Below are positions 22,456-50,925 of a stretch of DNA of 64,000 nucleotides, piece by piece. Both the position numbers and the translations under genes were made by a program. The first letter of the stretch is position 1, and every line of letters starts with the position of its first letter. The notes beneath the pieces are model-generated. The model did not search any database, was not told where the DNA came from, and saw only the letters and a program-made list of their open reading frames with translations. Source of the DNA: Macrostomum lignano (Eukaryota); the NCBI GenBank assembly GCA_002269645.1, contig NIVC01000046.1, positions 1 to 64,000 of the forward strand. Direction: 5' to 3'.

Positions 22456-23888
22456 TCAAGCCGCTGCATCAAGTCTCTCCAGCTTCCGCCTGACCCAGCC
22501 GATCTTCTCCTCGTCCTGCGTCTCCATGGCGACGCGTCTCTCTTCCTCGATCATCTCCATCTGCTGCAGGCTGAGCTCCACGTGCTCGCGGCAGTCGCTG
22601 TAGTGAGCCAGAGTGAGCAGCTCCTCCAAGTCCGGGTCTCCAAGCAGCTGTTCAATCCAATGATCGAATGCGATTGCAGGTGCGCGATTGTGGAGCAGCT
22701 CAGCTTGGAGACTCCAGCTCAGGCAGCGGAAGTTCACGTGCAGGTGGGGCTGCGAGAGAGACTGCGACAGTCTGGCTGTGAACAGAGTCTGCGTGAACTT
22801 GGGAAGGAATGGGAAACGAGGCGGAGAGTCGCATGGGAGGCAGAACCTCCACGCCCAGTCAGAGTCTTCTGGCAGCTTTATCTCACTAAACTGGTATCTA
22901 CCCTTATCTCGAATATCCAATGGCTTCAACCCCGACTCAACCTGATGTCCCCGCAGCTTCATCGTGAGTCTCTCAGCCTCCTTAAAGTCTCTGAACTTCC
23001 AATGCGCCATGGCGGTCATGCACAGGGCGGCGCACTTGCACCACTTCAGCTTACGAAGGAGACTGAGCTGCCTCATCAGGGTGTCTCTGTCGCTCGATTC
23101 CGACTGCAGCTCGCTCACACACTGGTGCACCACACTGTACACGTCTGCGAACTTGTAGTACCTAGCTGGATAGTCACGTCCTTTCCTGATCTTCGTGACA
23201 GCAGGCGGCGCTGTCAGAGGCAGCAGAGTGAACGGGTGAAAGTAGAACTTCTCTGACTGCAGAGGTCTCACGAGACTCCTCAGCTGCTCGACCACTCCGC
23301 CGATGTCGCTTCTCAGCTCACAAAGTCGGTCTCGAACCCTCGCCTTTGTGTTGTCGAAGTCGCCGCCGATTCCAGCATTCTTGAAGTAGAGCGGAGCGTC
23401 TGGCATGAAGAAGTGCGGCATGCACTCATCGGGCGAGCTGCTCGAGTCGATGAAGCTCAGCATCATGTCGAGAGACTCCTTTAGCAGAGCGATCAGATTG
23501 TGGGGCTGCCAAGCCTCAGTTTCAAGATATTTGCCATGCTTCTCCAGCATTGTGAAGAGCAGAGTCTTTGCATGGTAGGTCTTGAGTCCATGTGTGTCCA
23601 GAGTGAGCGGCAAGTGTCTCTTGAAGATGAACTTGATGAGTGTGAACAGCTGGCCCTGGACTGTGCTCAGCTGTCTCATGATGTGTTTCTCTTGGAAGCT
23701 AAAGCTCACTCTGAGCTCGTTGGTCGAGCTCGGTCTGGTCGCCCGAACGAGGTGAACTGGAATATATGTGTCTTCAATCAGTTTTCTAATTCTGTCCTCA
23801 CAGAAACTGCTGCAGCACTCGATCGCATGGCACGTGTCCTGTGCAGGCCGCACACCGCACGCAGTGGCTCTCACTGCAGGTTGGTTGC
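22456..23888 (-). CDS. ANK-cGLR paralog B exon 4: Mab-21/cGAS-like C-lobe plus ~270-aa helical extension
   Basis: Acceptor CCCTGCAG|GC in phase 1. Motifs QDTCHAIEC, ELRVSFSFQEK, LKTYHAKTLLF and CMPHFFMP match Mab-21/cGAS family signatures; open to TGA. Confidence 0.9.
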
Positions 23889-24381
23889 CTGCAGGGCGCA
23901 GTGAGCGGAGAGTCGCTTTGTGGCGAGTGAAAAAGGATGGGTTGGTTTGAATCCAATGAAATATTATTTAAAACAACAATATTTTCTCTCGGCTGCTAGA
24001 TAATTCTGATGATTCGACAGTAAAATTAAATTTACTCTTCTTTCAAACCTAAAAGGCTAAAAGGTAGAAGTTTCCACCTAATTTTCATATTTTTAAGGCA
24101 TGCAATTATGAAAAATATTGAATTGGACTTAAAGACTTGATAAGAAAACTTAAGACAAGCGCTTAGTTTCAAAGCTCTGTCATTCATTCGACCATAATAA
24201 AGATCGCTTAACACCTGTTTAGATAAGTAACTATTCGTACTTTTGTTACCCCCAATGAAAAGAGAAAATACAAATGAGGTGACAAAATCAAACAGTGGAA
24301 CGAAAGAACAATAAGAGCAAACAGCTACGGCAGATGCAATAACAGAACTGTCCGCACCAGTCTCGGTCTCTCACTCAGTGC

Positions 24382-25146
24382 TCACACCAAAGAAGTCCTG
24401 GGCGCGACCTGGTGGGTCACCGGCTGCTGGCGGAGCTGCTCAGAGTTGGGTTGCTGGGTTTCAAACCGCCTGCACAGCCGGTTCACGTGCACCCAGCGAA
24501 TCGGCCGGCTGCCGAAGGCGCGGCGGATGCACACAGAGTGGCCGCGCTGCTCAAGCACTGTCCAGCCCGGCTCCAAATAGGGCGCCAGCTTCGAGCGCCG
24601 CATCTCAATGCTCAGCAGCACCTCGGCGCCTTGGAGAAACTGCAACAGATCTGACGCCTTCTTGTCGTGAGCCGCCTTCTGCTGCTGCCCGGCGGCTACC
24701 AGATTCTCCTTGACGAACTCGCGAATCCGGGCCAGCCGCCACCCCAGTAGTGCCAAGTAGGTGCTGGTGCTGCTCTTCACCTTCGGCGGGAGCGCCGGGT
24801 CGTAGCCGGTCATCACCGTCAGCGGTGCCACCTTGGTTGAGCTGTGGACCCTGGAGTTGTAGGACAGGACCACCAGCGGCAGCTGCTCCTCCCAGCTGGA
24901 ATCGGTATCGGCGAGCAGCCTCAACAGCTGCAGCAGCGACTTGTTGCCGAGCTGCACCAGTCCATTTCCCTGTGGATGGTACGGCGTGGTGCGCGTCTTC
25001 CTGATGCCCAGTGCTCGCAGCGTCTCCTGGAACAGCTCGCTATCCAAGTTCGCGCCCTGGTCCGAGTGGATGATAGATGGGACTTCAAGCAGGGAGAAGA
25101 CCTTCACTGCAGCGTCCGCGATGGTCTTGGCGGTCTGATCTGACAT
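24382..25146 (-). mobile_element. Gypsy integrase fragment in intron 3 of paralog B
   Basis: IIHSDQGANLDS and RTTPYHPQGNGL motifs; no upstream pol or LTRs. Confidence 0.85.
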
Positions 25147-25771
25147 CGGCCCGGCGGTCAGGAACTTGGAGAACTGGTCCTGGTAGCTGTTGCCATTGCA
25201 AGCAAGATTTTCATTTTTAGTAAATTGGAAGTCGTGTCATCAGTTGTGAGGGAGCGCACCTGTTTGCCACTTACGATTTATTTGCCTCGTATTTATACAC
25301 TAGCTGAGTATACACATGCTATTGTACATATGTACATTGTACATATACGTATGTTAGCCTTTAAATCTTTAGCTGGTATTCAATAGATTTTTGGCTGCTT
25401 GATGAGACGCAACAAAATTTTGGCGCCCTCTGAAGAGCCGAATAAATACCTCTGCACCCACCGAGTTTGCCCTCAGCTGCTCTGGCTTAATCAGGTTGTA
25501 GCTGAGCACAGCTGCTCAAGCATCATCAGGACTCAGTGCCCCGCAGCAAGGCACCAATCAGGCAGTCAGGGCGGCTTCGGTTTATTTTGTTTGAAATTTC
25601 CAATTGAGAGCAGCAGCACCTCAGCAGAGCTATGGTGTGGGTCACCCAAATACCGCTGCACCCACTCTGCTGCAATCGGAGCCTGTGAATTCAAAACCCA
25701 ATAGCCCGGCTCAGCCAGTCGGCATCAGAGTTTTCCTTTCAATTTCGCCTGCCGCTGGTTTCATTCGTTCA

Positions 25772-27506
25772 CTCAGTCAGTTGGCAGGGCGCGTTGCACT
25801 TTGAGGCTGGCTAGGGGGTTTGGCGGGCGTGGCAGGGTCTGGCTGCCGGTCGTGCTTTGCGCGTGCCCCTCTCCAGCCGTGCCCCTGCCCCGTGCTCAGT
25901 GCTGGTTGGCTGCGGCCGGGCCAGCTTTGTCGCGGGTGCAGCCCCTCCCTTCCTAGGCGGGGTTTTGATTGGCTGGCCGGCGCGGCCAGTCTTTATTTTG
26001 TTGTGTCATGAATGTGTTATGACAGTGTGCTCTTTGCTAAGTTGCTGCACCGGGCCAGTGGGCCGTCCTCTCCCCCCCTCCTTAGATATTTTCTGACTCA
26101 CCCACCTGCACTTCTGCGCGTGCGTACCCTCCCCCCCTCTCTGCCTAGGCCTTGTCTGTTGTTCAACCCCCATTCTCTGCGTGCGACCCCCCCATTCTTT
26201 GCGTGCGACCCCGCCCCATTCTTTTGTTAGCTTTGCTGCCCCGCCCCTGTTTGTGATTGGCTGCCAGTCCCAGTCTGCCGTGCTGCGCCCCGGCGATTGG
26301 CTGGTACAGCTCATGTGTTGCCTTGGCTGATGTCTAAGCCCCCTTTTCTGCCTTTATCCTGCGCCCTCAACCCCAGTTTGCTGCCTATTTATTCGGACCC
26401 CCTTGGGACCCCATTCTTGTCGTCTTCGTGGCTCCTCGGCGATTGTGCAAGCGTTGGTTGCTGAATTGCTATTCCTCGCAGAATTGCTAGACAAATATAT
26501 AAGTAAAGAATATCGAGATCACTACTGCTCTGACGGCGCTGTTTCTTGTACAACTGAAATCGCGGCTGGTAAGCCTTCCAATTTGTACGTCATTTGGGTC
26601 TGCATCTGTACTAGGCACCTTAGAGGGATTAAGTGCGTCGTACGCCGGTCCCACCCCAAGCAGCTCTGCGTCGTACGCGAGTCTGTAGGCTGTCGAGCGT
26701 CGTACGCTCGAGCAGCCTAGTCCCGACGGACACCGCGTCGTACGCGTGTCAGTGGAGGACCGCAGCCGGGGTCAGTACACGAACCCTGGTCTGGAAAAGG
26801 GGCACGAAAGGACCGAGCCCTTGAGCCCCAACATCACAGTTGGGGTTGTTTGTTTGTTTTTGTGGGCTTAGCCGGTGAGGCCATCGGCCCCAGGGTTTGG
26901 TTGTTATTTATAGTGCGGCTCTGGGTCTTGCCCACGCCCTTCGTGCTGTTTGCGCTTTTGTGTTTTGGTGTGCTCCGAGAGTGCAAGCGCGAGAATTGAC
27001 GTAATAAACAGCAACACTAGCTACTACGATAAACGAAACATAAGAGCCTTAGTGAGAAGAGTCTTTGAGAATTGAGAAGTCAGAAACCAGTCAAGAAGTC
27101 AAGTCAAGAAGTCAAGACCAACGAGCAAATCAATAAACGTACGAACGGCGATTTGGCCACTGGTAAGCCGCCTGCTGCTTGAGTTCATTCTTTTCTGGGG
27201 AGCTTGTTAGGTAGAGTTCTTGCCAGAGCGTCATAACGCCGGAGATCATATAGCTTCTTGTAGTACTGTACCGGCTACTCTATACAGTTTGTACAACCTA
27301 CAGTATCGAGACTAGAAGCACTCGAGAGTGTCACCACACCTCGAGCCGCAGCGTGAACTCTGAGTGTCAGAACACCAAATGGATCGAATTACTTTCGAAG
27401 AGCGTCATCACGTCTGCTCGTATCCAAAAAAGTACAGACAGAGCGTCACAATATACATCACAATATATAATATCACGTATATTACATATTGTACTCGGGA
27501 CTGGAC
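25772..27506. mobile_element. Unclassified ~1.7-kb insertion specific to intron 3 of paralog B
   Basis: Interrupts an intronic block (..GCCTGCCGCT.GTTTCA / CACCCAAACCGAC..) that is contiguous in paralogs A and C. LTR-like composition; termini unresolved. Confidence 0.5.
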
Positions 27507-27654
27507 ACCCAAACCGACCCAGGTTAAGACAAAGTCACAGAAGCTGCTGGAAGCTGGGCACCACTCGGTTGCGAATTTATATTTGAGCAAAGTTAATGGG
27601 CTTCCAGTTGCATGCGGATCTCAGCATTCTGATGATGAACCCAGCCTCACTCAC

Positions 27655-28025
27655 CTGCTCCCACTGCCACCTGTGCGTGGCCCTCCGTGACCTGCAGCCA
27701 AGTGGCGTTTCGGCAGGATCCAGATCTTCCTTTGCAGCCACCTTCCAGATGAAACTCCTGCCCAGCAACCAGCACAGTCCAGTCAATGTCCGAGTCTGCA
27801 GCTGTCCTGCCGTTCACTTGCACCAGACTGTTGGCCCAGCCCTCTGCGTAGCTGCCCGTCATCTGCCTGCGATCGCCTTCCTGTGTGAGGACTCGAACGA
27901 CTTGTTGCAGCCAGTCAGCCAGTCTCTGCTGACACTCTGCTCTCTGCTCGGTGAATCCCGCATCGCTGAGCAGTCGATGCAGCTCCTCGCTCAGGCGCCT
28001 GTCTTGCTGGGAGTCGTCTGAGAGC
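27655..28025 (-). CDS. ANK-cGLR paralog B exon 3: nucleotidyltransferase active-site exon
   Basis: Acceptor TCATTCCAG|G (phase 2), donor GCAG|GTGAGT (phase 1); MTGSYAEG...DSDIDWTVLV. Confidence 0.9.
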
Positions 28026-28226
28026 CTGGAATGATCCGAGATGCGTGTGGGTGAATTGCTCAGAGTTGGATGGTCAGAACAAGCAGGAGAGCTGAGAGTG
28101 CAGCTGCTGCAGCACTCAGTCCAACCCAATCTTAACCCTGCTGAGTTTCGCTGCAATTTCTGCCCCAAGCTGCCAGCCTGTTAGAAGGCGCAATGCGGCA
28201 GTGAAAGCCGAACCGGTCAGACTCAC

Positions 28227-28280
28227 CGATGGAGGCGCGAATCCAAGCCGTGAGCGGCTTCCTGCCGGGCCTCTGGGGTT
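28227..28280 (-). CDS. ANK-cGLR paralog B exon 2 (54-nt linker)
   Basis: CATTGCAG|...|GTGAGT, frame-preserving; exactly 54 nt in all three paralogs. Confidence 0.65.
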
Positions 28281-29351
28281 CTGCAATGCGGGAAGGAAAG
28301 CCAGGGTTCTCACAGCAGTGAGGATTTACAATGTTTTTTGTGCCACACATTTTTGATTGAGTTAAAAATTCATCTTCATCTGCAGCTTCATCAATTTTCA
28401 ACGCTCTTTAAGGTAGAAGTATCAATGAGCAAGAGAGAGAGTCGAGCCAAGAGCGAGTGAATTCCACAGATTGAAGGAGAAGCTCGCTTGCTGGACCGGA
28501 GATTTGAGACTTTAGTTTTAGTATATTGGATGCTTGATGATTTAAAAATATCAAACCGGCTGCGGTCTGCCGTGGACTGCACCTGAGCAAACTGATGCCC
28601 ATCTTTTTCTCCTCTTCTTTACTGTGCTCGCCATTTTGCCACGTAGCACTTGCTAAGCCAAGAATTATTGCACTTTGATGTAATCGCCCTTGATGACCGT
28701 CCGCTTCGCACGGAGGAGCAATGACCGTAGGCTGCCTATGACCGGGCAATGACCTGAAGGACCTTTGCCCTGAATGACCTGAAGGACCTCGAAACCAGAG
28801 GGCCGAGGACCCACATGGGCCCCACCTGCAGCCAAGGTGCAATAATTGGCGTGACCGAGTGGCTGCCACCACTCTATATGACCGGGCTCACCTGGATCTA
28901 TGACCAGACCTTATCAGGCTAGAGCCCTGTCTGGATTGGTTACCAGAGGATTTAAGCTAACAGGGGAGGCGCATGCAACCGAGTACAGGGACTTTGCTTT
29001 GGGCACAATCGGGAACTCTGGGATCAATCTGGAGGATTTCTCAGCAGGGGATCCTTTGTGGCTGTGAATGAGGCGGACTTCCGGCTTCAATTACTAAGAG
29101 TAGTGTTAGCTTAATATGTGCTAGCTAAAGTTCAGATTGCTCAGGGCGAAGGGATGGGGTTGCAACCTCCCTGCTGCCATTCTGTGCCACAAATCGCTAA
29201 TTCCCTCTACTGACACACACGGACCCGCAGCACGCACACACAGGCGGGCGTTTCACAGGGAGAGGCCATTGGCTTACCCAAACTTCCTTATGTTTTTTCA
29301 CCCAGGGAGAAAGGCTCAGCAACTCATGAGTGAAATGGTGGTGAAAGAGTG

Positions 29352-32300
29352 TGAGATGCCGGGCGTGTTTTGATGTACTGCACTGCACCTGACTCACCTG
29401 AGTCCAATAATGAGCAACTCTAACTAGCCAGCCGGCCTAACTAACCAAACCGGCCAACTCCGGTGTACGCTGCTCTGCGTACTTTCTCTCTCTCTCCCCC
29501 TTGACATGATAATATTCAGTAGTGATCGATTCTGAGTTTTAAGCCCACTTACTTGTTTGTCTTTTAAGCCTATATATTGGTCTCGCCACCTTCCACCTCG
29601 TATCTCACATACTTTGCAATAATTCGCTCATCTCAAATACACAACTTCGTACTTGACACAAACCAAGCCCACGGGCGGCCTTGTCATCGTTTACTGGGCG
29701 CGACTTGACAATGGCGTCGCAAGCAAACAACTCCGAACTAAACTTGGATGACCCAGACACAGCCGAAGCCTGGCTGCTCAGCTTTGCGGCTGCCGCACGA
29801 ACCAAGAAACTGACGGACACAGAAGAAGATCGGCAGATCACCGATCTATTCCTCGCCAGGGCAGGTCTCAAGGCACTGAGAACGCTGTCCCTCATGGCTG
29901 CCCCGGCCAGCCTGGAGAAAAAAACATTTGCACAAATTCGAGACATCATCAAGGAGACAATCCGGCCCAAGAAGCGCCTCGATATTGCCGAACGAGCAAA
30001 ATTCCTCGCCCTCAGGCAGGACCCAAGCGAAAGTGTCGCCTCCTACTACCGCCGACTCCGTGCAGCAGCGGCTACGTGTAGCTTTGAGAAGCTCGGGACG
30101 AAACAGTCAAGCGAGGACGAGCTCATCACCATGCGGCTCGTGGACGGACTCGCCTCTGTGGACCACAAGCATAGACTGTTGGAGAGAATGCAAGCTACCG
30201 ACATGCTGCTGAACGAGGTGCTGCAAACACTTGAGCAACTTGAGCAAATCCGCTGCTACAACACCAGCACCGGGGCCGCTGCCAACACCGAGGCCAGCAT
30301 CGCCTATGCAGGGCGGCGCGGCACGCCCCCACAGCCAGCGCCGGACACCAGACCACCGAGGAACATCAGCAAGACGAAGTGCCAATATTGCGGCGGTTTG
30401 CACCAGCAAGGCGCATGCCCTGCGTTCGGCAAGCGGTGCACCGCCTGCAACAAGAAAAACCACTTTGCAGCCGTATGCAGGTCCCGCACCGTGCATCTAG
30501 AGACCTGGGAGGAGAACGAAGGCGCCGAGATGGAGCGAGACACCGCCAACGTCTTCGTCATCAGACCGGAGCGCAGAGAGCGGAACGGCATCTTCCGGCA
30601 GGTCAAAATCAACGGCAAGGAGCTGCAAATGCAGGTAGATACGGGCGCTGATGTGAGTCTCATTCCACGGGGCCACTGGGAGACACTTGGATGCCCAGCA
30701 CTGAGGAAATCCAGACGAATTCTGAGACAGTTCGACGGATCGATCATAAGAACCCTGGGAGAGTTCACTGCCACGTGGGATGACCAAGAAAAGTTCCGCA
30801 CAGTCGACTTGGTGGTCACAGCAGCGCGCAAGTCACATGGACTGCTGGGTCTTGACAATCTGGATTGGAACCCCGAAGGCCAGGCAGCCAGTGCTCAGGA
30901 TTCCGTAGTTCAACATCTCGATTGTCTGAAGGGTTTCCAGGCCAGGATCAAGCTGATTGAGGGTGCCAAGCCTTTCTACTGCGCAGCCAGAGCAGTGCCG
31001 CTGCACCTGCGTGACCGCGTCAATCAGGAGCTAAAGCGTCTCGTGACTGAGGGCATCATCGAGCCGGTGACGGAAGGCGGCAGCGAATGGGCGTCCCCGA
31101 TCGTCTGCGTCCTAAAACCTAATGGCAATGTCAGAATTTGCGCCGACTACAAAGCGGGGGTCAACCATCAGGTGTGCGGGGACACCTACCCCATGCCAAC
31201 CGTCGAAACGATCTTCTCGGACGTGGCCGAAATGACTGACTTTGCCACTCTCGACCTATCTGACGCCTACTTACAGATCGAGCTCGAGGAGAAGAGCAGG
31301 GAGGTCACCACGATTGCAACTCCTTTAGGGCTGTTCCGCTACACCCGACTAGTGCCTGGCCTTAAGTCAGCATCCGCCATCTTTCAAAAAGCAATGGAGA
31401 CCACCCTCGAGGACGTAAGCGGCAAGGTCATTTATCAAGACGACATCCTTATCGGAGGTCAATCTGCCGAGGGTCTCAAGGCCAAAGTTGATGAGGTAAT
31501 CAAGACCCTACAGGCGGCCGGCATGAATATAAATCTCGCCAAATCCAACCTGGGGGCCAAGTCAGTCAAGTTCCTGGGCTACAGAATCAGCGCAGACGGA
31601 ATCTCGCCAGACCCCGGCCTGGTCAGCAAAATCATGGAGATCTCCGCGCCACGCGACCGTCGCCAGTTAGAGTCGTTCCTTGGTCTCTGCAATTTCTTCG
31701 GAAGGTTTGTCAACAACTATGCGCACGTTGTCGAGCCTTTGAACCAGCTGCGCAAGAAGGGAGCGGAGTTTGTGTGGGGAGCTGCGCAAGAAGCGGCCTT
31801 CCACCAGCTGAAGAAGCTGCTGAGCTCCGGCCCGATCATCCAGCCTTATGACCGAGCCAAAGAGACAACGCTGACGACAGATGCCAGTGAAAAGGCGGTG
31901 GCCGCCGTGCTCACGCAGGAAGGGCACCCCGTCATCTACTTCAGCCGGCGATTGACACAGGCGGAGGCGCGCTACTCCAACATCGAGCGGGAGGCTCTGG
32001 CGATTGTTTGGGCGATGGAGAGGGCTCGACAATTCCTTCTAGGCAAGCGTTTCACACTGCGAACGGACCACCGCCCTCTAGAGTTCCTGTTTGGAACAAG
32101 ACAACAACTCCCCAAGGTCGCCAACGCTCGACTGCTGCGCTGGGCCATCCGCCTCATGGGGTTCGACTTCGCAATTGAGTACGTCCGAGGAGCCCAAATT
32201 CCGCACGCCGATGCGCTCTCCCGGCTCGACTTTGCCGACGTTCCGGACGACCAGTCTGAAGCTGCGACTCACCACCAGCACCTGGTGCATTGGGCTGGTG

Positions 32301-33894
32301 AAAGCGTCATTGGTTGGAATGAGCTAGCAGAGGAGACAAAACGTGACAGGCTGCTAGCAGATGTCATGCGCAGGATAGCCGGAAATCGCTGGTCGGGCTG
32401 CTCCCCTGCAGAGCGGCCCTTCAAGGCAATTCGTCACGCGCTTACAATAGACGACTCGGTAGTGTGCTACGGAGACCGGCCAGTCATTCCCTCGTCTTTG
32501 CGAAGCCGCGTCCTGGAGTTGGTACACAGCGGGGCGCACCCCGGTGCCTCGAGCACACGAGCGCTGGTCCGCAACTCCGTCTGGTGGCCAGGCTACTGCG
32601 GCGACGTGGAAGGATTCGTCCGTGCCTGCCACACCTGCGCCAAGCAACGCCAAAGCGGCCACAGCAGCGTCCATCAATGGCCGGCCGACTCTGAACCCTG
32701 GGGACGCGTCCACATGGACCACGCTCACGTCCCAAAGGTCGGGCTCCTGCTGGTCCTGGTCGACGCCATGTCCGCCTGGCCGGAGGCCATCCGAGTGCCG
32801 GACAAGAGCGCCGCGACCGTCAGGAAGGTCCTCCAGGAGGTCTTCGCCCGCAATGGAGTTCCACGAACCCTGGTGAGTGACAATGCTGCTGAATTTCATG
32901 ATGAAGGGTTGGTGAGTTGGCTGAGCAGAATTGGCTGCCGCGCTGTGAAAACTCCGCCATACCACCCCCAGTCGAACGGCCTGGCTGAGCGCATGGTGCA
33001 GACGATCAAGGTGGCCTCGGCGGGCTGGGACCAGCAGGAGTCGTACGACGCGTTCCTCGCGCGGATTCTGCTAAACTACCGATGCGTGCCGCATGCCGGA
33101 AGAGAGTTCAGTCCAGCGCAGCTGATGGGCAGGCAGCTGCGGAACCCCATCACCATGAGAACAGCAATCCGGTCCGAGGTGTGGTACGCCCCAAGGAGAG
33201 GCGCGATCCCGGAGAAGGCAGAATTCCTAGCGCAGAAGGGATCCAACACGGCGCTGATCATGCGACAAGGCAACAGAGTCACACTCGCCCACCTTGACCA
33301 ACTTCGGCGACACGAGCCTGACAACACTGAAGGCGACGCGACTGCGACAACCGACCTGAACGGCGACCTCCGCTCCGAGGGGGCGGCGAAGCCCGCCGAC
33401 CTGCCAACAGTGACGCCCGGCAGCGACGGACCTCCGGTCTCGGCCACGTCAGAGCAGGTGGAGAACCAGCCGGCGGCGAGCTCAGTCCCGAGTATTCCCG
33501 AGTCCGGTGGCCACAACAGCTTAGCGGAGAGCAGAGCCGGAACTGACAGGGCGACTACGGCTCAGAGACCGAGCTACAACCTCCGAGCGAATCGAGGCGT
33601 GCCCCCATTGCGATTCGAAGGGGGGAGATGAGGTGTCGGGCGTGTTTTGATGTACTGCACTGCACCTGACTCACCTGAGTCCAATAATGAGTAACTCTAA
33701 CTAGCCAGCCGGCCTAACTAACCAAACCGGCCAACTCCGGTGTACGCTGCTCTGCGTACTTTCTCTCTCTCTCCCCCTTGACATGATAATATTCAGTAGT
33801 GATCGATTCTGAGTTTTAAGCCCACTTACTAGGGCGCGACTTGACAGACTTGGGCGCGACTTGTACTAGGGCGCGACTTGGGCGCGACTTGACA
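29352..33894 (+). mobile_element. Full-length Ty3/Gypsy (Mag-like) LTR retrotransposon, Gypsy-B
   Basis: 5' LTR 29352-29710, 3' LTR 33629-33894, TG...CA ends, 5-bp TSD GAGTG, PPT GAAGGGGGGAGA. Confidence 0.95.
29711..33631 (+). CDS. Gag-Pol polyprotein of Gypsy-B (intact single ORF)
   Basis: CCHC-type knuckles, protease DTGA, RT YQDD, RNase H TDAS, integrase HHCC and D-D-E core; no stops from ATG 29711. Confidence 0.95.
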   Translation: MASQANNSELNLDDPDTAEAWLLSFAAAARTKKLTDTEEDRQITDLFLARAGLKALRTLSLMAAPASLEKKTFAQIRDIIKETIRPKKRLDIAERAKFLALRQDPSESVASYYRRLRAAAATCSFEKLGTKQSSEDELITMRLVDGLASVDHKHRLLERMQATDMLLNEVLQTLEQLEQIRCYNTSTGAAANTEASIAYAGRRGTPPQPAPDTRPPRNISKTKCQYCGGLHQQGACPAFGKRCTACNKKNHFAAVCRSRTVHLETWEENEGAEMERDTANVFVIRPERRERNGIFRQVKINGKELQMQVDTGADVSLIPRGHWETLGCPALRKSRRILRQFDGSIIRTLGEFTATWDDQEKFRTVDLVVTAARKSHGLLGLDNLDWNPEGQAASAQDSVVQHLDCLKGFQARIKLIEGAKPFYCAARAVPLHLRDRVNQELKRLVTEGIIEPVTEGGSEWASPIVCVLKPNGNVRICADYKAGVNHQVCGDTYPMPTVETIFSDVAEMTDFATLDLSDAYLQIELEEKSREVTTIATPLGLFRYTRLVPGLKSASAIFQKAMETTLEDVSGKVIYQDDILIGGQSAEGLKAKVDEVIKTLQAAGMNINLAKSNLGAKSVKFLGYRISADGISPDPGLVSKIMEISAPRDRRQLESFLGLCNFFGRFVNNYAHVVEPLNQLRKKGAEFVWGAAQEAAFHQLKKLLSSGPIIQPYDRAKETTLTTDASEKAVAAVLTQEGHPVIYFSRRLTQAEARYSNIEREALAIVWAMERARQFLLGKRFTLRTDHRPLEFLFGTRQQLPKVANARLLRWAIRLMGFDFAIEYVRGAQIPHADALSRLDFADVPDDQSEAATHHQHLVHWAGESVIGWNELAEETKRDRLLADVMRRIAGNRWSGCSPAERPFKAIRHALTIDDSVVCYGDRPVIPSSLRSRVLELVHSGAHPGASSTRALVRNSVWWPGYCGDVEGFVRACHTCAKQRQSGHSSVHQWPADSEPWGRVHMDHAHVPKVGLLLVLVDAMSAWPEAIRVPDKSAATVRKVLQEVFARNGVPRTLVSDNAAEFHDEGLVSWLSRIGCRAVKTPPYHPQSNGLAERMVQTIKVASAGWDQQESYDAFLARILLNYRCVPHAGREFSPAQLMGRQLRNPITMRTAIRSEVWYAPRRGAIPEKAEFLAQKGSNTALIMRQGNRVTLAHLDQLRRHEPDNTEGDATATTDLNGDLRSEGAAKPADLPTVTPGSDGPPVSATSEQVENQPAASSVPSIPESGGHNSLAESRAGTDRATTAQRPSYNLRANRGVPPLRFEGGR

Positions 33895-34103
33895 GAGTGC
33901 CTAATAAGGAGTTTAGTAATTGTTAATAATTAGGCCCTTAGGCGAAATAAGCAGGCGATTCGGCGGCTTCACTATTGAGTAAAATGCAGCAAAGTACGGT
34001 ACACAATTGGCTCAGTTCTCTAATCAAGCAATGGAAATTAAGCAAACCCCGGATAAGCAAAGGCAATTAGAGTACAAATCAGTACACGAACTCACCGGCA
34101 GCT

Positions 34104-34226
<123 letters not shown>

Positions 34227-35404
34227 TGGAGTGAGCGGTTGACTGCAGACAGGCAGGTAGTGAAGTGGCGATGCGCTGAAGCGACGAGACGCTGATGAAG
34301 CTCAGGTGATGCTGAGCATGCTGGACCGCGGGCCGGCATAGGTTCGTCTTATAGACGAAACGAGTCCAAAGGTAGGACCGAAGGTACAAGCCCTAGGCGT
34401 TAGCCGTAGCAAAGGCCAAAGGCAACCATCCGAAGGAAGGAAAGAAAGACTTCTAGAGGTTCTCACGCCGTAGATCACTTCTTTAAACAGTCCTCACGGC
34501 GGCCGCTCGAAGCTCGTTTCCAAGACTCCCTCTCTCTGATTAGCTGCCGGGAAAATGGCGTCAATTAGTCATGATGAGAAGTATGAGAACGGCATAGCAA
34601 CATGAGAAATGGGAGAATTGCGCAATTTGGAGGAGGGGTGGGGGAAAATGAGCACAGCGGGGAGCCGAAGAAGTGTTGCGTAAGCAAATAAGAACAAAAG
34701 GATCCAGAACGAGAACAAAGGAAATGGAAAACGGGGATAATTGGGGAGAACCGAGAACAATAGCAGAGCAAAAATCGAGAGAGGGGTGCCAATTGGGTGC
34801 GAAAACGAGAACAAAAGAACGAGAAACTCTGAAAAATGTGATAATTATGTGCACAAAGGAGAACAAAAAATAGTAAAAGAGAACAATAGAGGCGGAGGAG
34901 GGGTGGGTGTCGCATGAGAAATCTTGATAAGAGAACAATAGCATGAGAAAAGGTTGCGCAAGAGGAGGGTGATGATCGAGTCATCGGGGTGAGGGAGGGG
35001 TCAGGAGCCTTGCGTCACCATTTGGGATTCTAAAAGGAGATGGGGTGACGAGGAGCACAAACAATACTCTAAGTAGGCACGGGATGAAGAAGGGACAGCG
35101 CAAGAAAACCGTGCTATAACGTTGACAAAAAGATGGGAAACATGAGAAGCACATGATGCATGGGGTGTGGCGCATGAGAAAAGGGGGGCAGGCGAGATGC
35201 ACAAAAAGGGGGCCCCGGAAGGGCAAGTGTGACTGATTGGAAGACGGAACAGGGACAGCAAGGGAACGCTACAGAGCGGGAGTCATTGCGCCTGGTCAGG
35301 GACCCGGTCCAGTCTCGACAGCTCTGCCCAGTGGGTCAAAGGGGATCGGGGACATTTCGAAAAATCTCCTGACATGACCCCGCGATCAAAACGTGGTTAC
35401 ATCA

Positions 35405-35930
35405 ACTTGATGAACCAAGGATTACTGCACTTGATGAACCAAAGATTATTGCACTTTATGAACCAAGGATTATTGCACTTGATGAACCAAGGATTCTTGC
35501 ACTTGATGAACCAAGGATTCTTGCACTTGATGAACCAAGGATTCTTGCACTTGATGAACCAAGGATTATTGCACTTGATGAACCAAGGATTACTGCACTT
35601 GATAAACAAAGGATTACTGTACACTTGATAAACCAAGGATTATAACACTTGGCAAACCAAGGATTACTGCACTTGATAAACCAAGGATTATTGCTCATAA
35701 TAAGCCAAGGATTATTGCACTTAGCAAACCAAGGATTACTGCACTTGATAAACTAATGATTTTTGCTTGATAAACCAAGGGTTACTGCACTTGATAAGCC
35801 AAGGTTTAATGCACTTAATAAACCAAGGATTATTGCACTTAATGAACCAAGGATTACTGCACTTGATAAACTAATGATTATTGTACTTGATAAACCAAGG
35901 ATTACTGCACTTGATGAACTAAGGATTATT
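35405..35930. repeat. 24-bp minisatellite (target of LTR Y2)
   Basis: AACCAAGGATTATTGCACTTGATG, about 20 copies; one more partial unit lies left of Y2 at ~28658-28675. Confidence 0.95.
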
Positions 35931-36650
35931 GCTAAGGATCTTGCCATCTTGGGGTATGCTATCTGGGGGATACTTGGGATTGTATTTTGGGGTTCTTGCT
36001 ATTGTTTGGGGGGTGCTTGCTGTTGTAATTGGGCGTATGCTTTGTATCTTGGGGGGGGGGGTAGGATGCTTGCTGTCTGGGTTGCTCTCTATCTTGGGGT
36101 ACTTGCTATCTGGGAAGGGGTGCATGCTACCGGAGGATGCTTGCTATTTAGGGGGATGCTTGCGGTCTGAGTTATAGATTCTATTAGGACAAATGCGTGT
36201 TGTCTTTGTGAAGGCTTTTTTGTTGTATTTTTTTCGTATTTTTGTTACTTTCACAAAATAGAGATTCTTAGCAAACATCTTTGTCCGTGACAATTTTACT
36301 CGAACAAGGTGATTTATAAAACAGAAGAAGGAATTGGTTCTTTGATTGCTTATTGTGCGCCCCGTAAGGGGGCACTAGATTTATAGTGCTTAGCTTAAAA
36401 AATAATATCATAAAAAGATGTTCGCGAAATTCCCGCCTCACTCAATGTTCGAGTTGTACTTTAGTTTTCACGTTGTTTCACTGTCACTTTCTCTCTCTCT
36501 CCCTCCCGTGACTGGTCATTCTTGCGCGCTATCGTTTTACCCCTAACAGTTTGTACATTTGCGCTTGCCAGTGAGCATGGTTCTGTTCAATCGTAGTCTT
36601 CTTCGCTTGCAAACATGACCTGGCTCAGTTTTGCCTAGACCAACACTCAC

Positions 36651-39600
36651 CCCGCTCCAATGGGATCCAGCAGCCGCAGCACCTGCCGCCGCTCGAATCG
36701 CTCTGCCACCTGCGCACACGTCAGACCCTGACCGTCTCGATGACTCGCATCCGCTCCTCTGTCCATCAGAGCCTTGGCTGCTCGCACGTGACCGGCTTCG
36801 CACGCTCGTGACAGAGCAGTCCGACCCTGACTGTCTTCAGCACGCACTGACGCACCGAGATCGATGAGTTTCTCAATGAGCTCGTGATGACCTGCATCAG
36901 CTGCCAGCATGAGAGCAGTGGCTCCAGTGCTGTCTGGCAGATCGACATGCTGTGTGCTGACTCGCTCATCATTGATCAGTGTGACAGCAAGAGCGACGTG
37001 TCTTTGAGAGATGGAGAGACGGAGCAGCTGTGTGATGTGAGCTGGCTGCATTCGAGAGAATGTTTTTTTGAGAACAGAGTTCCTGCCTTCGATGGCCATT
37101 GCTGCGGTGAAGTTGAGGATGGTGCTGGATTGGAAGAGCCAGTCGGGCTCGAGGCCGAGGGAGGCAACGACATCTTCGTGAAGACGAGAGCAAGCCATGA
37201 CTGCGCAATGGATACGCAGATTCGCTCTCTGATCCGGACTTGAGAGGCACGAGATGAGAAAATCAACCGCTTCTCCTTGATTCTTTTCTGTAGCATATTT
37301 GGCAGCCTGGATGCAGTACTGATTTCTTTTTCTTTGGTCAGCGACTGTCAGCACAAGAAACTTGACGACTTCCCAATGATAATTGTCAGCAGCAGATTCA
37401 GCAGCCTCGATGCAGCACTGATCTCTTCTAGTTTGGTCAGCGACTGTCGCCACGAGAAACTTGACGACTTCCCACTGACCACTGATTACAGCTATTCTCG
37501 CAGCCTTGATGCAGCACTGATCTCTTTTTGTTTGGTCAGCGACTGTCGGCACGAGAAACTTGACGACTTTCCACTGATAATTGTCAGCAGCAGATTTGAC
37601 AGCCTTGATGCAGCACTGATCTCTTTTTGTTTGGTCAACGACTGTCGGCACGAGAAACTTGACGACTTTCCACTGATAATTGTCAGCAGCAGATTTGACA
37701 GCCTTGATGCAGCACTGATCTCTTTTTGTTTGGTCAACGACTGTCGGCACGAGAAACTTGACGACTTCCCACTGATCATTGTATGCAGCAGATTCTGCAG
37801 CCTTGATGCAGCACTGATCTCTTCTTGTTTGATCAGCGACTGTCGGCACAAAAAACTTGACCACTTCTAAGTGACCATTTCTTGCAGCAGATTTGGCAGC
37901 CTTGATGCAGCACTGATCTCTTTTTGTTTGGTCTGCGACTGTCAGCACAAGAAACTTGACGACTTCTAAGTGACCTTTTCTTGCAGCAGATTTAGCAGCC
38001 TTGATGCAGCACTGATCTTTTTTTGTTTGGTCAGCGACTGTCGGCACGAGAAACTTGACGACTTCTAAGTGACCATTTATTGCAGCAGATGTGGCAGCCT
38101 CGATGCAGCAATCATATCTTTTTGTTTGGACAGCGACTTCAGGCACGAGAAACTTGACGACTTCTAACTGACCATTTCTTGCAGCAGATGTGGCAGCTCT
38201 GATGCAGCACTGATCTCTTTTTGTCTGGTCAGCGACTGTCGGCACGAGAAACTTGACGACTTCTATCTTACCTTTGTGTGCAGCACATTTAGCTGCCTCG
38301 ATGCAGCAATCATATCTTTTTTTTTGGTCCGCGACTTTAGACACGAGAAACTTGACGACGTCCCACTGATAATTGTCAGCAGCAGATGTGGCAGCCTGGA
38401 TGTAGCACTGATCTCTTATTGTTTGCTCAGCGACTTTAGGCACGAGAAACTTGACGACTTCCCACTGATCATTGTCAGCAGCAGATTCAGCAGCCTCGAT
38501 GCAGCACTGATCTCTTTTTATTTGGTCAGCGACTTCAGGCACGAGAAACTTGACGACTTCCCACTGACCACTGATTACAGCTATTTTTGCAGCCTTGATG
38601 CAGCACTGATCTCTTATTGTTTGCTCAGCGACTTTAGGCACGAGAAACTTGACGACGTCCCACTGATAATTGTCAGCAGCAGATGTGGCAGCCTCGATGC
38701 AGCACTGATCTCTTCTTGTTTCGTCAGCGACTGTCGCCACGAGAAACTTGACCACTTCTAACTGACCATTGTATGCAGCAGATGTGGCAGCCTTGATGCA
38801 GCACTGATCTCTTCTTGTTTGGTCAGCGGCTGTCGACACGAGAAACTTGACCACTTCTAACTGACCATTGTATGCAGCAGATGTGGCAGCCTCGATGCAG
38901 CACTGATCTCTTCTTGTTTGGTCAGCGGCTGTCGACACGAGAAACTTGACCACTTCTAACTGACCATTGTATGCAGCAGATGTGGCAGCCTCGATGCAGC
39001 ACTGATCTCTTCTTGTTTGGTCAGCGACTGTCGACACGAGAAACTTGACCACTTCTAACTGACCATTGTATGCAGCAGATGTGGCAGCCTCGATGCAGCA
39101 CTGATCTCTTTTAGTTTGGTCAACGACTGTTGGCACGAGAAACTTGACGACTTCCCACTGATAATTTTCAGCAGCAGATGTGGCAGCCTCAATGCAGCAC
39201 TGATCTCTTTTTGTTTGGTCAGCGACTGTCGGCACGAGAAACTTGACCACTTCTAACTGACCATTGTATGCAGCAGATTTAGCAGCCTTGATGCAGCACT
39301 GATCTCTTCTTGTTTGGTCAGCGACTGTCGGCACGAGAAACTTGACGACTTCCCACTGGTAATTGTCAGCAGCAGATTCAGCAGCCTCGATGCAGCACTG
39401 ATCTCTTCTTATCTTGTCAGCGACTGTCGCTACAAGAAACTTGACGACTTCCCAATGATCATTGTATGCAGCAGATTTTGCAGCCTCGATGCAGCAATCA
39501 TCTTTTTTTGTTTGGTCAGCGACTGTCGGTACGAGAAACTTGACCACTTCTAACTGACCATTGTATGCAGCAGATTTGGCAGCCTTGATGCAGCACTGAT

Positions 39601-39994
39601 CTCTTCTTGTTTGGTCAGCGACTGTCGGCACGAGAAACTTGACCACTTCTAACTGACCATTGTATGCAGCAGATGTGGCAGCCTCGATGCAGCAATCATA
39701 TCTTTTTGTTTTGTCAGCGACTTTAGACACGAGAAACTTGATGACTTCCCACTGATCATTGTATGCAGCAGATTCTGCAGCCTCGATGCAGCACTGATCT
39801 CTTCTTGTTGGGTCAGCGACTTTAGAGACGAGAAACTTGACTACTTTTAACTGACCCTTTCTTGCGGCAAGTTTAGAATACCTTTTGCAAAAAAGATATT
39901 TTCTGTTTGTCTCTCTCTGAAGGTCCAGATGATGTTGGAGTGCCTGGATATTTCCTGTCTTGGCGGCCTCATCGGATCTGATCTGTTGGCTCAT
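36651..39994 (-). CDS. ANK-cGLR paralog B exon 1: ~27 atypical ankyrin repeats, constant region, 3 canonical ankyrins
   Basis: 33-aa repeats such as DQCCIEAATSAAYNGQLEVVKFLVPTVADQTRR; C-terminal GATALMLAADAGH and GRTALSRACEAGH. The ORF stop lies inside donor GG|GTGAGT (phase 2). Confidence 0.92.
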
Positions 39995-48832: not shown

Positions 48833-50319
48833 TCAGTCTGACTCAGCCTTCCTTTTCCGACCTCGATTTTGCGGCTCGTCTTTGAGGACTAAGGCTGCTA
48901 AGGCTGCTGCTTCAAGTCTTTCCAGCTTCTGCCAGACCCAGCCGATCTTCTCCTCGTCTTGCGTCTCCATGGCGACGCGTCTCTCTTTCTCGATCATCTC
49001 CATCTGCTGCAGGCTGAGCTCAACGTGCTCGCGGAAGTCGCTGTAGTGAGCCAGAGTGAGCAGCTCCTCCAAGTCCGGGTCTTATTCCAGCTCTCGCTTC
49101 CAATCCTCCAGTTTAATTGCAGGTGCGCGATTGCGGAGCAGCTCAGCTTGGAGACTCCAGCTCAGGCAGCGGAAGTTCACGTACAGGTGGGAGGAGAGAG
49201 GCTGCGACAGTCTGGCTGTGAACAGAGTCTGCGTGAACTCGGGAAGGAATGGGAAGCGAGGCGGAGAGTCGCAGGGGAGGCAGAACCTCCACGCCCAGTC
49301 TGAGTCTTCTGGCAGTTTAGAATGGCTATATTGATTTGCTTGAATATCATCTGGCTTCAACCCTGTCTCAACCTGATGTCTCTGCAGCTCCATCGTGAGT
49401 CTCTTAGCCTCCTCAGATTCTCCGAACTTCAAATGCGCCATGGCGGTCATGCACAGGGCGGCGCACTTGCACCACTTCAGCTCATGCAGGAGACTGAGCT
49501 GCCTCATCAGGGTGTCTCTGTCGCTCGATTCCGACTTCAGCTCGCCCACACACTGGTGCACCACACTGTACACGTATTCGAACCGGAATTTCTCTAGTAT
49601 ATAGTATCTACTGTCCCTTATCTCCGTGACAGCAGGCGGCGCTGTCAGAGGCAGCAGAGTGAACGGGTGAAAGTAGAACTTCTCTGACTGCAGAGGTCTC
49701 ACGAGACTCCTCAGCTGCTCGACCACTCCGCCGATGTCGCTTCTCAGCTCACAAAGTCGGTCTCGAACCCTCGCCTTCGTGTTGTCGAAGTCGCCGCCGA
49801 TTCCAGCGTTCTTGAAGTAGAGCGGAGCGTCGGGCATGAAGAAGTGCGGCATGCACTCATCGGGCGAGCTGCTTGAGTCGATGAAGCTCAGCATCATGTC
49901 GAGAGACTCCTTGAGCAGAGCGATCAGATTGTGGGGCTTCCAAGTCTCAGTTTCAGGATCTGTGCCATGCTTCTCCAGCATTGTGAAGAGCAGAGTCTTT
50001 GCATGGTAGGTCTTGAGTCCATGTGTGTCCAGAGTGAGCGGCAAGTGTCTCTTGAAGATGAACTTGATGAGTGTGAACAGCTGGCCTTGGACTGTGCTCA
50101 GCCGTCTCATGATCCGTTTCTCTTGGAAGCTGAAGCTCACTCTGAGCTCGTTGGTCGAGCTCGGTCTGGTCGCCCGAACGAGGTGAACTGGAATATATGT
50201 GTCTTCAATCAGTTTTCTAATTCTGTCCTCACAGAAGCTGCTGCAGCACTCGATCGCATGGCACGTGTCCTGTGCAGGCCGCACACCGCACGCCGTGGCT
50301 GTCACTGCAGGTTGGTTGC
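48833..50319 (-). CDS. ANK-cGLR paralog C exon 4 (Mab-21 C-lobe); premature in-frame TAA at 49082-49084
   Basis: Acceptor CTCTGCAG|GC in phase 1; same motifs as paralog B. The frame continues after the TAA as DPDLEELL... to 48833. Confidence 0.88.
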
Positions 50320-50925
50320 CTGCAGAGCGCGGTGAGCGGAGAGTCGCTTTGTGGCGAGTGAAAAAGATGGGTTGGTTTGAAACTTGCTAAATTTAAATTT
50401 TAAAATTCTCTTAAGAGCCAAATAGCTCGTAAATGCACCTGTGAGGCATGAGCCTCTGCACCCACTGAGTTCGCCCAGATTCAGCTTCAGCTGCTCTGGC
50501 TTCATCAGGCTGCAGCTGAGCACAGCTGCTCAAGCATCATCAGGACTCAGTGCCCCGCAGAAAGGCACCAATCAGCAGTCAGGGCGGCTTCGGTTCATTT
50601 TGTTTGAAATTTCCAAGTGAGAGCAGCAGCACCTCAGCAGAGCCATGCCGCCTACCGTGGGTCACCCAAGCACCGCTGCACCCACTCTGCTGCAATCGGA
50701 GCCTGTGAATTCAAAACCCAATGGCCCGGCTCAGCCAGATGACATCAGAGTTTTCTTTTCAATTTCGCCTGCCGCTTATTTCAGCACCCAAGCCGACATT
50801 CGCAGTCACAGAAGCTGCTGGAGGCTGGGCGCCACTCGGTTGGGAATTTAAAATTGAGCAAAGTTAATGGGCTTTCAGTTGCATGCAAATCTCAGCATTC
50901 TGATGATGAACCCAGCCTCACTCAC

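What the first reader, a model, noticed from the sequence alone, without database searches (positions are those of the whole stretch)
22456..39994. Hidden spliced gene: ankyrin-array cGAS-like receptor (ANK-cGLR), predicted intact at 1733 aa
Seen in the sequence: the 1115-aa ankyrin ORF 'stops' at a TGA that is part of a GTGAGT donor (phase 2, 36651). The 54-nt exon (28280-28227) preserves phase. The NTase exon starts in phase 2 (28025) and ends in phase 1 (27655). The Mab-21 exon starts in phase 1 (23888). The total 3344+54+371+1433=5202 nt is stop-free, and the same phases hold in paralog C. Established: GS..EG..SDxD, xRxSFSxxEK and LxxYHxKTxLF are signatures of the cGAS/Mab-21 nucleotidyltransferase family, whose animal cGLR members make cyclic dinucleotides. 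Inference: the third catalytic Asp is in QDTCHAIEC, and the gene encodes an innate-immune sensor-enzyme whose ligand specificity comes from a large ankyrin array. Ankyrin-fused Mab-21 proteins may already exist in invertebrate annotations, so novelty needs checking.
Basis: partly seen in the sequence, partly recalled or inferred. Interest (0 to 1): 0.95.

Follow-up and report, generated by a model that had tools for sequence, protein, structure and literature searches.

The report
Ankyrin-repeat cGAS-like receptor gene, flatworm

Summary
Four minus-strand exons (39994-36651, 28280-28227, 28025-27655, 23888-22456) join through GTGAGT donors and CAG acceptors into a 5202-nt, 1733-codon frame whose only stop is the last codon. 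Exon 1 encodes 27 near-identical 33-aa ankyrin-type repeats plus a degenerate ankyrin tail. Exons 3-4 encode a cGAS/Mab-21 nucleotidyltransferase with family-invariant GS, DxD and a third Asp, and a predicted fold that best matches cGAS.

The window comes from the flatworm Macrostomum lignano or a very close relative. A GenBank model built from RNA-seq transcripts, PAA62074.1 (1217 aa), has the same four-exon plan and the same junction sequences.

The family is not new. At least 81 clusters at 50% identity match at E<1e-30. Li et al. 2023 list these ankyrin-cGLR fusions and cloned five M. lignano members, one 80% identical to this gene. None is among their 15 flagged active enzymes.

This copy has no exact match on record. 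Its introns are swollen by transposons. One neighbour is a pseudogene and the other carries a nonsense codon. Expression, enzyme activity, the ligand and the presence of STING were not tested. I rate it a new member of a known kind, with modest interest.

The parts
36651..39994 (-). Exon 1 (3344 nt, ends in phase 2): start codon, 27 x 33-aa ankyrin-type repeats, degenerate linker repeats and canonical ankyrin repeats
   Evidence: ORF and donor GTGAGT at 36650. Pfam Ank_2 E 5.1e-91. AF2 of residues 693-1114 has pLDDT 92.9, and the top Foldseek hits are DARPins, ankyrin-1 and AnkB at E 5e-11. The N-terminus MSQQI... is shared with PAA62074.1.
37292..39856 (-). 99-nt tandem repeat array (25.9 copies, 87% matches) that encodes the ankyrin repeats
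   Evidence: Tandem Repeats Finder. The repeats are in exact 33-aa register. Variation is concentrated at unit positions 6, 9, 13, 15, 17, 25 and 32.
36734..36952 (-). Canonical ankyrin repeats at the end of exon 1 (residues 1015-1087)
   Evidence: Best Pfam Ank, Ank_2 and Ank_5 stretches; coordinates.
28281..36650 (-). Intron 1 (8370 nt; 270 nt in paralog C)
   Evidence: Junction sequences. Comparison with paralog C. It contains a 24-nt minisatellite at 35405-35932.
29352..33830 (+). Ty3/gypsy-type LTR retrotransposon inserted antisense in intron 1
   Evidence: 202-nt LTRs at 29352-29553 and 33629-33830 are 99% identical. The 1316-aa ORF 29681-33631 has protease, RT, RNase H and integrase domains.
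28227..28280 (-). Exon 2, a 54-nt microexon that preserves phase (TPEARQEAAHGLDSRLH)
   Evidence: Acceptor TTGCAG and donor GTGAGT. It is conserved at 85-89% nt in paralogs A and C. The same microexon is in the PAA62074.1 coding sequence.
27655..28025 (-). Exon 3 (371 nt): N-terminal helix and NTase N-lobe, with G1190-S1191 (27856-27851) and D1212/D1214 (27790-27782)
   Evidence: GS and DxD are invariant in the family. Predicted strands lie at these positions.
23889..27654 (-). Intron 3 (3766 nt; 606 nt in paralog C, about 6 kb in the PAA62074.1 gene). It holds an integrase fragment at 24382-25146 (-).
22456..23888 (-). Exon 4 (1433 nt including the stop): third Asp D1274 (23838-23836), RVSFSFQEK, the Mab-21_C helical lobe (23610-23389), and a helical C-terminal extension of about 250 aa with no Pfam match
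49082..54151 (-). Paralog C: the same four exons and phases, about 15 ankyrin repeats, and a nonsense TAA at 49084-49082 that removes the last ~59 aa
5317..8722 (-). Paralog A: a decayed copy with in-frame stops, loss of the third-Asp segment and of the canonical ankyrin repeats, and a truncated last exon

Best explanation
The region is a genuine four-exon gene of Macrostomum lignano, or a very close relative. It encodes a 1733-aa ankyrin-repeat cGAS-like receptor (ANK-cGLR).

The protein has five parts in order:
- an N-terminal solenoid of 27 near-identical 33-aa ankyrin-type repeats;
- degenerate and canonical ankyrin repeats;
- an 18-aa linker encoded by the microexon;
- a cGAS/Mab-21 nucleotidyltransferase core with GS, DxD and a third Asp;
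- a helical C-terminal extension.

It is one copy in a tandem cluster and belongs to a very large lineage-specific family that is already annotated and catalogued as cGLRs.

Inferred mechanism: the ankyrin solenoid binds or is released by a ligand, more likely a protein or other non-nucleic-acid cue. This switches on the NTase core, which polymerises or cyclises NTPs into a nucleotide second messenger read by a downstream receptor.

What is shown: the exon structure, the domain identities, conservation of the active-site residues, and family membership. What is inferred: expression of this copy, catalysis, the ligand and an immune role.
For: - Reading frame and consensus splice sites.
- Identical junction sequences and the same four-exon plan in the coding sequence of PAA62074.1 / BOX15_Mlig034155g1. 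That annotation comes from RNA-seq and transcriptome assemblies (Wudarski 2017, PMC5730564).
- All 43 word-index homologs are M. lignano apart from one unnamed JGI protein. Many span ankyrin repeats, the microexon peptide, the NTase core and Mab-21_C.
- Pfam Ank E 5e-91, and Mab-21_C at 26.1 bits against a cut-off of 24.1. All 12 aligned members hit Mab-21_C.
- A family profile against the PDB finds cGAS first (E 6.7e-7), then cGLR1 and MAB21L1.
- The AF2 model of the C-terminal 618 aa has pLDDT 81 and pTM 0.84. Its top Foldseek hits are all cGAS, aligned over 360-390 columns with target-normalised TM about 0.55.
- GS, S-D-x-D and the QDT Asp are invariant in members down to 37% identity.
- dN/dS of the catalytic core is 0.44-0.58 between copies, against about 1 in the flanking regions.
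- The ankyrin segment models at pLDDT 92.9 and matches ankyrin-repeat structures.
- Li et al. 2023 include paralogs in their curated cGLR set and in their table of ankyrin fusions.
Against: - There is no transcript evidence for this copy, and no identical protein is on record.
- Intron 1 carries a young 4.5-kb LTR retrotransposon and is 31 times longer than in paralog C.
- Both neighbouring copies are damaged.
- dN/dS is about 1 in the ankyrin tail and the C-terminal extension. This fits relaxed constraint as well as diversifying selection.
- The NTase N-lobe has no sequence-level match to Pfam PF03281 or to cGAS. The AF2 model is weakest there, with pLDDT 32-38 just before the third Asp.
- The third Asp sits in Q-D-T rather than a strict hydrophobic-D-hydrophobic context.
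- Five M. lignano cGLRs, two of them from this subfamily, were in the Li et al. screen with pooled nucleic-acid ligands. None carries an 'active' note.
- Presence of STING in Macrostomum was not tested, and planarians lack it.
Confidence: 0.6

Rival explanations
1. This copy is a decaying or silenced family member. The open frame only reflects how recently it was duplicated, so it is not a working gene.
For: - Paralog A is a pseudogene and paralog C has a nonsense codon.
- There are transposon insertions in introns 1 and 3.
- dN/dS is about 1 outside the core.
- No exact protein is on record, and the counterpart position in NIVC01001976.1 yielded no annotated protein in my searches.
Against: - 5202 nt remain stop-free, and all six splice sites keep strong consensus.
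- Core dN/dS is 0.44-0.58, also against the transcribed PAA62074.1 gene.
- PAA62074.1, whose model is transcript-derived, itself has a ~6-kb intron 3, so long introns are tolerated. The average M. lignano intron is 1.1-1.4 kb.
Confidence: 0.25
2. The ankyrin exon and the NTase/Mab-21 exons are mainly expressed as separate products. One would be an ankyrin-only protein of 1115 aa that ends at the TGA inside the retained donor. The other would be an NTase-only protein from an internal or trans-spliced start.
For: - The stop codon lies immediately inside the exon-1 donor.
- About 39% of M. lignano genes are trans-spliced.
- Annotated family members without an ankyrin part exist, for example P0006 at 659 aa. 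P0001 skips the repeat array.
- The 8.4-kb intron with an antisense retrotransposon could impair splicing.
Against: - Most annotated relatives are fusions, and PAA62074.1 runs from the same start codon through all four exons.
- The order ankyrin, microexon, NTase, Mab-21 is kept in all three copies in the window.
Confidence: 0.15
3. The protein is a non-catalytic Mab-21-type scaffold. The NTase-like fold would serve binding or regulation and would make no second messenger.
For: - The N-lobe has no Pfam PF03281 match.
- Foldseek also matches MAB21L1 (E 6e-5) and MB21D2.
- Close paralogs in the Li et al. screen are not flagged active.
- STING is absent from other flatworms that have been examined.
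Against: - GS, DxD and the third Asp are invariant across members as low as 37% identical.
- Li et al. placed paralogs in the set curated for an intact active-site motif.
- Their constructs lacked the ankyrin part and were offered only nucleic-acid ligands, so missing activity is expected if the true ligand is different.
Confidence: 0.25

Closest known systems
Macrostomum lignano PAA62074.1 (BOX15_Mlig034155g1, 1217 aa), with PAA68676.1 (BOX15_Mlig016402g1) and other annotated ANK + Mab-21_C proteins
   Same: - Same start peptide, the same four exons with identical junction sequences, the same domain order and the same catalytic motifs.
- 80-86% aa identity over the C-terminal 618 aa for the best hits.
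- Its locus NIVC01001976.1 is colinear with the window at about 95-96% nt in the spacers.
   Different: - The window gene has 27 array repeats against about 10.
- It has much larger, transposon-filled introns 1 and 3.
- No annotated protein is identical to it.
Ankyrin-fused cGLRs catalogued by Li et al. 2023 (Fig. 1C, S2A, Table S2), e.g. in Stylophora pistillata
   Same: A cGLR core with an appended ankyrin repeat module, proposed there to mediate protein-protein or protein-ligand interactions.
   Different: - No function has been shown for any ankyrin-fused member.
- The flatworm arrays are long, nearly identical tandem units, and there is an extra ~250-aa C-terminal helical extension.
Vertebrate cGAS
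   Same: - Bilobed NTase fold by Foldseek (E 2e-5).
- GS / DxD / D triad.
- The motifs RxSFSxxEK and YHxKT.
- Best PDB sequence-profile match.
   Different: - Only about 13% identity.
- No sequence-detectable N-lobe similarity.
- An ankyrin array in place of cGAS's basic N-terminus.
- 20 residues between GS and DxD, against 12 counted in the human cGAS sequence of Li et al. Table S3.
- The ligand is unknown.
MAB21L1/MAB21L2 and MB21D2
   Same: The same fold family. Foldseek gives E 6e-5 to 5e-4 and the PDB profile gives E 0.03.
   Different: From my own knowledge, those are conserved low-copy developmental proteins without ankyrin fusions. This gene belongs to a fast-evolving tandem family of at least 81 clusters.

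Membership tests
cGAS-like receptors (criteria of Li et al. 2023) | Active-site motif h[QT]GS - X8-20 - [DE]h[DE]h - X50-90 - h[DE]h | tested here: met
   M-T-G-S (1188-1191), 20 residues, D-I-D-W (1212-1215), 57 residues, Q-D-T (D1274). G, S, both Asp of DxD and the third Asp are invariant in 12 members down to 37% identity. Two caveats: the spacing of 20 is at the upper limit, and the residues flanking the third Asp are Q and T, not hydrophobic.
cGAS-like receptors (criteria of Li et al. 2023) | [quoted passage not shown] | tested here: inconclusive
   C-terminal bundle: met. Pfam Mab-21_C scores 26.1 bits against a cut-off of 24.1, and PDB profile hits to cGAS reach E 6.7e-7. N-terminal core: no hit to PF03281 up to E 10. 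hhalign against human cGAS and an oyster cGLR aligns only the C-terminal half.
cGAS-like receptors (criteria of Li et al. 2023) | Predicted structural homology to known cGLR / CD-NTase enzymes | tested here: met
   The AF2 model has pLDDT 81.1 and pTM 0.84. The top 50 Foldseek PDB hits are cGAS, MAB21L1 and MB21D2. The best is 6edc_A at E 2.1e-5, probability 1.00, target-normalised TM 0.56, 384 aligned columns.
cGAS-like receptors | Ligand-dependent synthesis of a nucleotide second messenger | not testable with these tools
Literature only. Five M. lignano cGLR cores were cloned for the Li et al. screen: PAA86972.1, PAA45980.1, PAA57558.1, PAA93208.1 and PAA68676.1. The last is 80% identical to this gene's C-terminal part.
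cGAS-like receptors | A cognate receptor (STING or other) in the same genome | not tested
   No tool here searches a flatworm genome. M. lignano is absent from the held text of Li et al. Table S5. The planarian S. mediterranea lacks cGAS and STING.
Ankyrin repeat proteins | Tandem ~33-residue helix-turn-helix repeats that match ankyrin profiles and stack into a solenoid | tested here: met
   Pfam Ank_2 E 5.1e-91 with 15 stretches and Ank_4 E 3.8e-77. The period is exactly 33 aa over 27 units. AF2 pLDDT is 92.9, and the Foldseek top hits are DARPins, ankyrin-1 and AnkB at E 5.5e-11. Array repeats differ from the canonical form: helix 1 is about 17 residues, and there is no TPLH motif or beta-hairpin loop.
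Macrostomum lignano ANK-cGLR multigene family | High identity, shared exon plan and synteny with annotated M. lignano members | tested here: met
   80-86% aa identity to the best hits over the C-terminal 618 aa. P0020 is 97% identical to paralog C. The coding sequence of PAA62074.1 has identical junctions. Spacers are 95-96% identical to NIVC01001976.1.

The most novel reading that the evidence does not exclude
Macrostomum would have kept cGLR signalling, which planarians and parasitic flatworms lost, and turned it into a repeat-based receptor repertoire. That repertoire would consist of a large number of tandem ANK-cGLR genes (at least 81 clusters at 50% identity). Their near-identical 99-nt ankyrin units would expand, contract and vary at a few surface positions, so that the ankyrin solenoid recognises diverse non-nucleic-acid ligands and gates second-messenger synthesis. 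This would also explain why isolated cores were not flagged active with nucleic-acid ligands.
Probability: 0.15. Interest if true: 0.7.

Novelty: new member of a known kind. Interest (0 to 1): 0.3.

Why it matters
The result shows that a spliced eukaryotic gene can be read correctly from raw sequence. It also adds one unannotated copy, with one of the longer ankyrin arrays I saw, to a family that is already public. The family deserves some attention of its own. It is a very large flatworm-specific expansion of cGAS-like receptors in a phylum otherwise reported to have lost them, and it has no known ligand, product or receptor. The finding as stated does not open that question, because Li et al. 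2023 already listed these proteins and sampled them biochemically.

Tried and rejected
- Pfam PF03281 (Mab-21 NTase) on the model and on 12 family members up to E 10: no hit.
- hhalign of the family profile against human cGAS and an oyster cGLR, with sequences taken from Li et al. Table S3: only the C-terminal lobe aligns. The N-lobe assignment therefore rests on motifs and predicted fold.
- Exact look-up of the 472-aa exon-4 ORF in public assemblies: not on record. The source assembly stays unidentified.
- Target-site duplication around the LTR element: none evident.
- tRNA and Rfam scans of the window: nothing found.
- Literature searches for Macrostomum with cGAS, STING, Mab-21 or cGLR: nothing beyond the supplementary tables of Li et al..
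- A STING homology search was considered and not run. A word-index search with a vertebrate STING query is unlikely to reach a flatworm ortholog, and a negative result would be uninformative.
- Prokaryotic or viral origin was rejected. The region has GT-AG introns, a eukaryotic retrotransposon and flatworm homologs.
- An alternative exon-4 acceptor at 23874 (CCTGCAG|T) was rejected. The 23888 acceptor reproduces the annotated peptide ...GAG|NQPAV....


Full report
**Observation.**
- The 1115-aa ORF 36647-39994 ends in a TGA that is part of GGG|GTGAGT, so an exon ending at 36651 is in phase 2.
- The 54-nt segment 28280-28227 is bounded by TTGCAG| and |GTGAGT.
- The segment 28025-27655 is bounded by TTCCAG| and |GTGAGT.
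- The segment 23888-22456 follows CTGCAG| and ends in TGA.
- Joined, they give 5202 nt and 1733 codons with one terminal stop.

**Domains.** Exon 1 matches ankyrin profiles strongly (Ank_2 E 5.1e-91). The C-terminal 618 aa hit only Mab-21_C, just above the gathering score (26.1 against 24.1 bits), and do not hit the Mab-21 NTase model.

A 99-nt tandem repeat (25.9 copies, 87% matches) encodes 27 units in exact 33-aa register. Variation is concentrated at unit positions 6, 9, 13, 15, 17, 25 and 32. An AlphaFold model of residues 693-1114 is confident (pLDDT 92.9). It shows a 17-residue helix, a turn and a 10-residue helix per unit. It matches DARPins, ankyrin-1 and AnkB best (E 5.5e-11). The array is therefore an ankyrin-type solenoid with a lengthened first helix and no TPLH motif or hairpin.

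**Catalytic part.** In an alignment of 12 family cores down to 37% identity, several residues are invariant: the G and S of MTGS, the S-D-x-D of SDIDW, and the Asp of AQDTCH. So are residues of RVSFSFQEK and YHAKT. In the full model these are G1190, S1191, D1212, D1214 and D1274.

The spacing is 20 residues, then 57. This fits the motif Li et al. 2023 use to define cGLRs, with the caveat that the third Asp is flanked by Q and T.

A family profile searched against PDB sequences finds cGAS first (E 6.7e-7), then cGLR1 and MAB21L1, but only over the C-terminal lobe. hhalign against human cGAS and an oyster cGLR likewise aligns only that lobe.

The AlphaFold model of the 618-aa part has pLDDT 81 and pTM 0.84. 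It places DxD and the third Asp on strands. Its top Foldseek hits are all cGAS over 360-390 columns (E 2e-5, target-normalised TM about 0.55), followed by MAB21L1 and MB21D2. Confidence is lowest in the loop just before the third Asp. I could not measure the triad geometry.

About 250 residues after the Mab-21 lobe form a confident helical extension with no Pfam match.

**Origin and support for the splice model.** The 43 homologs found by the word-index search are M. lignano proteins, apart from one unnamed JGI protein. Many are annotated with ankyrin and Mab-21_C domains. P0020 is 97% identical to paralog C.

PAA62074.1 (BOX15_Mlig034155g1, 1217 aa) starts with the same peptide and carries about 10 array repeats. 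It contains ...GAG|SPEARQAAAHPLDSGLH|RLSDD... and ...GAG|NQPAV.... Mapping it onto its contig gives exons 10001-11574, 12034-12087, 12988-13349 and 19402-21065 of locus L001. These have the same GGAGCGGG|GTGAGT, TTGCAG|, CATCG|GTGAGT, TTCCAG|, GAGCAG|GTGAGT and CTGCAG|GCAACC junctions as the window gene, and an intron 3 of about 6 kb.

The BOX15 annotation was built from RNA-seq and transcriptome assemblies (PMC5730564). The exon plan is therefore supported by transcripts for a close paralog, though not for this copy.

L001 is colinear with window 54190-38959 at about 95-96% identity in the spacers. That contig carries at least three tandem family genes. The window is thus a duplicated, homeologous or other-assembly version of a known cluster. 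No exact match to the exon-4 ORF is on record.

**State of the three copies in the window.**
- Paralog C keeps all junctions and phases but has a TAA at 49084-49082, with homology continuing beyond it.
- Paralog A has in-frame stops, lacks the third-Asp segment and the canonical ankyrin repeats, and is truncated.
- The gene of the finding is the only copy with a full open frame.

That gene's introns are swollen. Its intron 1 is 8370 nt against 270 nt in C. It holds an antisense Ty3/gypsy element (29352-33830) with 99% identical LTRs and an intact 1316-aa gag-pol ORF. Its intron 3 is 3766 nt against 606 nt in C and holds an integrase fragment.

Pairwise dN/dS among B, C and the PAA62074.1 gene is 0.44-0.58 in the catalytic core, about 1.0 in the ankyrin tail and 0.8-1.4 in the C-terminal extension. 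This fits a constrained enzyme core flanked by regions that are either diversifying or relaxed. It does not tell those two apart.

**Size and spread of the family.** An exhaustive profile search of 1.84 billion representatives gives 1124 hits at E<=1e-3, 184 at 1e-10 and 81 at 1e-30.

They reach 3379 aa and are typically labelled as ankyrin-repeat-region proteins. Among weaker sampled hits, about E 1e-12 to 1e-18, are an annelid and a clam, as well as another M. lignano protein. The family is therefore a lineage-specific expansion.

**Comparison with what is known.** Li et al. 2023 (PMC9980059) make several relevant points:
- Some cGLRs carry ankyrin or TPR modules.
- M. lignano ankyrin-cGLRs appear in their domain table.
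- Five M. lignano cores are listed in the biochemical screen, including PAA68676.1 (my P0008, 80% identical to the window's C-terminal part) and PAA93208.1.

The planarian S. mediterranea lacks cGAS and STING (PMC13563047). I found no paper that discusses the Macrostomum family itself.

**Verdict.** The third-Asp inference is well supported by conservation. The gene is a real member of the cGLR family on two of Li et al.'s three criteria: motif and predicted fold. On the third, sequence homology across both lobes, only the C-terminal lobe is detectable.

Its expression, enzymatic activity, ligand, downstream receptor and immune role are not shown. The role of the ankyrin array in ligand specificity is an inference, and it is the same speculation Li et al. 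offer.

Since the architecture, the family and even an activity screen of close paralogs are already public, this is a new member of a known kind and of modest interest. The more interesting open reading is a repeat-diversified receptor repertoire in a flatworm that retained cGLR signalling. My evidence does not exclude it, and nothing here establishes it.

Noticed in passing
window 49082-49084 (-): Paralog C has a TAA nonsense codon (…KRELE*DPDLEELL…) where relatives have Glu. Homology continues in frame to about 48929, so the last ~59 aa are cut off.
   Followed up: yes
window 5317-8722 (-): Paralog A is a decayed copy. It has in-frame stops, the segment with the third Asp is deleted, the canonical ankyrin repeats are missing, and exon 4 is truncated at 5317. 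A 50-nt x 7.8 tandem repeat (7122-7511) lies in its intron 2.
   Followed up: yes
window 29352-33830 (+): A young Ty3/gypsy-type LTR retrotransposon with an intact 1316-aa gag-pol ORF and 99% identical 202-nt LTRs. No clear target-site duplication was seen.
   Followed up: partly
window 14082-17750 (-), 1524-2219 (-), 24382-25146 (-): Further retroelement pieces: gag, RT and RNase H ORFs, plus two integrase-core fragments.
   Followed up: partly
window 55276-55725 (-): An ORF with a clear Ets DNA-binding domain (Pfam E 1.8e-14). It is probably an exon of an ETS transcription factor gene next to the cluster.
   Followed up: no
window 60382-61164 (+): An ORF with weak matches to 7TM GPCR families (Srd E 3.6e-5; 7tm_1 below its cut-off).
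   Followed up: no
window 40810-48457; L001 1-9130 and 21517-31061: The ~8-kb spacer between paralogs C and B is full of minisatellites with 37-, 23-, 24- and 41-nt units. It recurs on both sides of the PAA62074.1 gene in NIVC01001976.1 at about 95-96% identity, so gene plus spacer is the unit of tandem duplication.
   Followed up: partly
window 44334-44410 (-): An isolated 77-nt fragment, 91% identical to part of exon 4, sits inside the spacer.
   Followed up: no
window 52522-54026 (-): Paralog C's ankyrin array has a 198-nt higher-order period (7.6 copies, 89% matches) on top of the 99-nt unit. This indicates expansion by two-repeat blocks.
   Followed up: no
window exon 3 and start of exon 4 (about 27740-27690 and 23830-23810, -): Family-invariant Cys and His residues lie in the NTase N-lobe (C96, C103, H115, C142, C148 in A2 numbering, e.g. 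FHLEGGCxxxxxC and DTCHAIECC). They might form a metal site or disulfides. This is not the cGAS zinc thumb position.
   Followed up: no
window 22456-23247 (-), C-terminal ~250 aa: A confidently predicted helical extension follows the Mab-21 lobe. It has no Pfam match and dN/dS of 0.8-1.4 between copies. Its function is unknown.
   Followed up: partly
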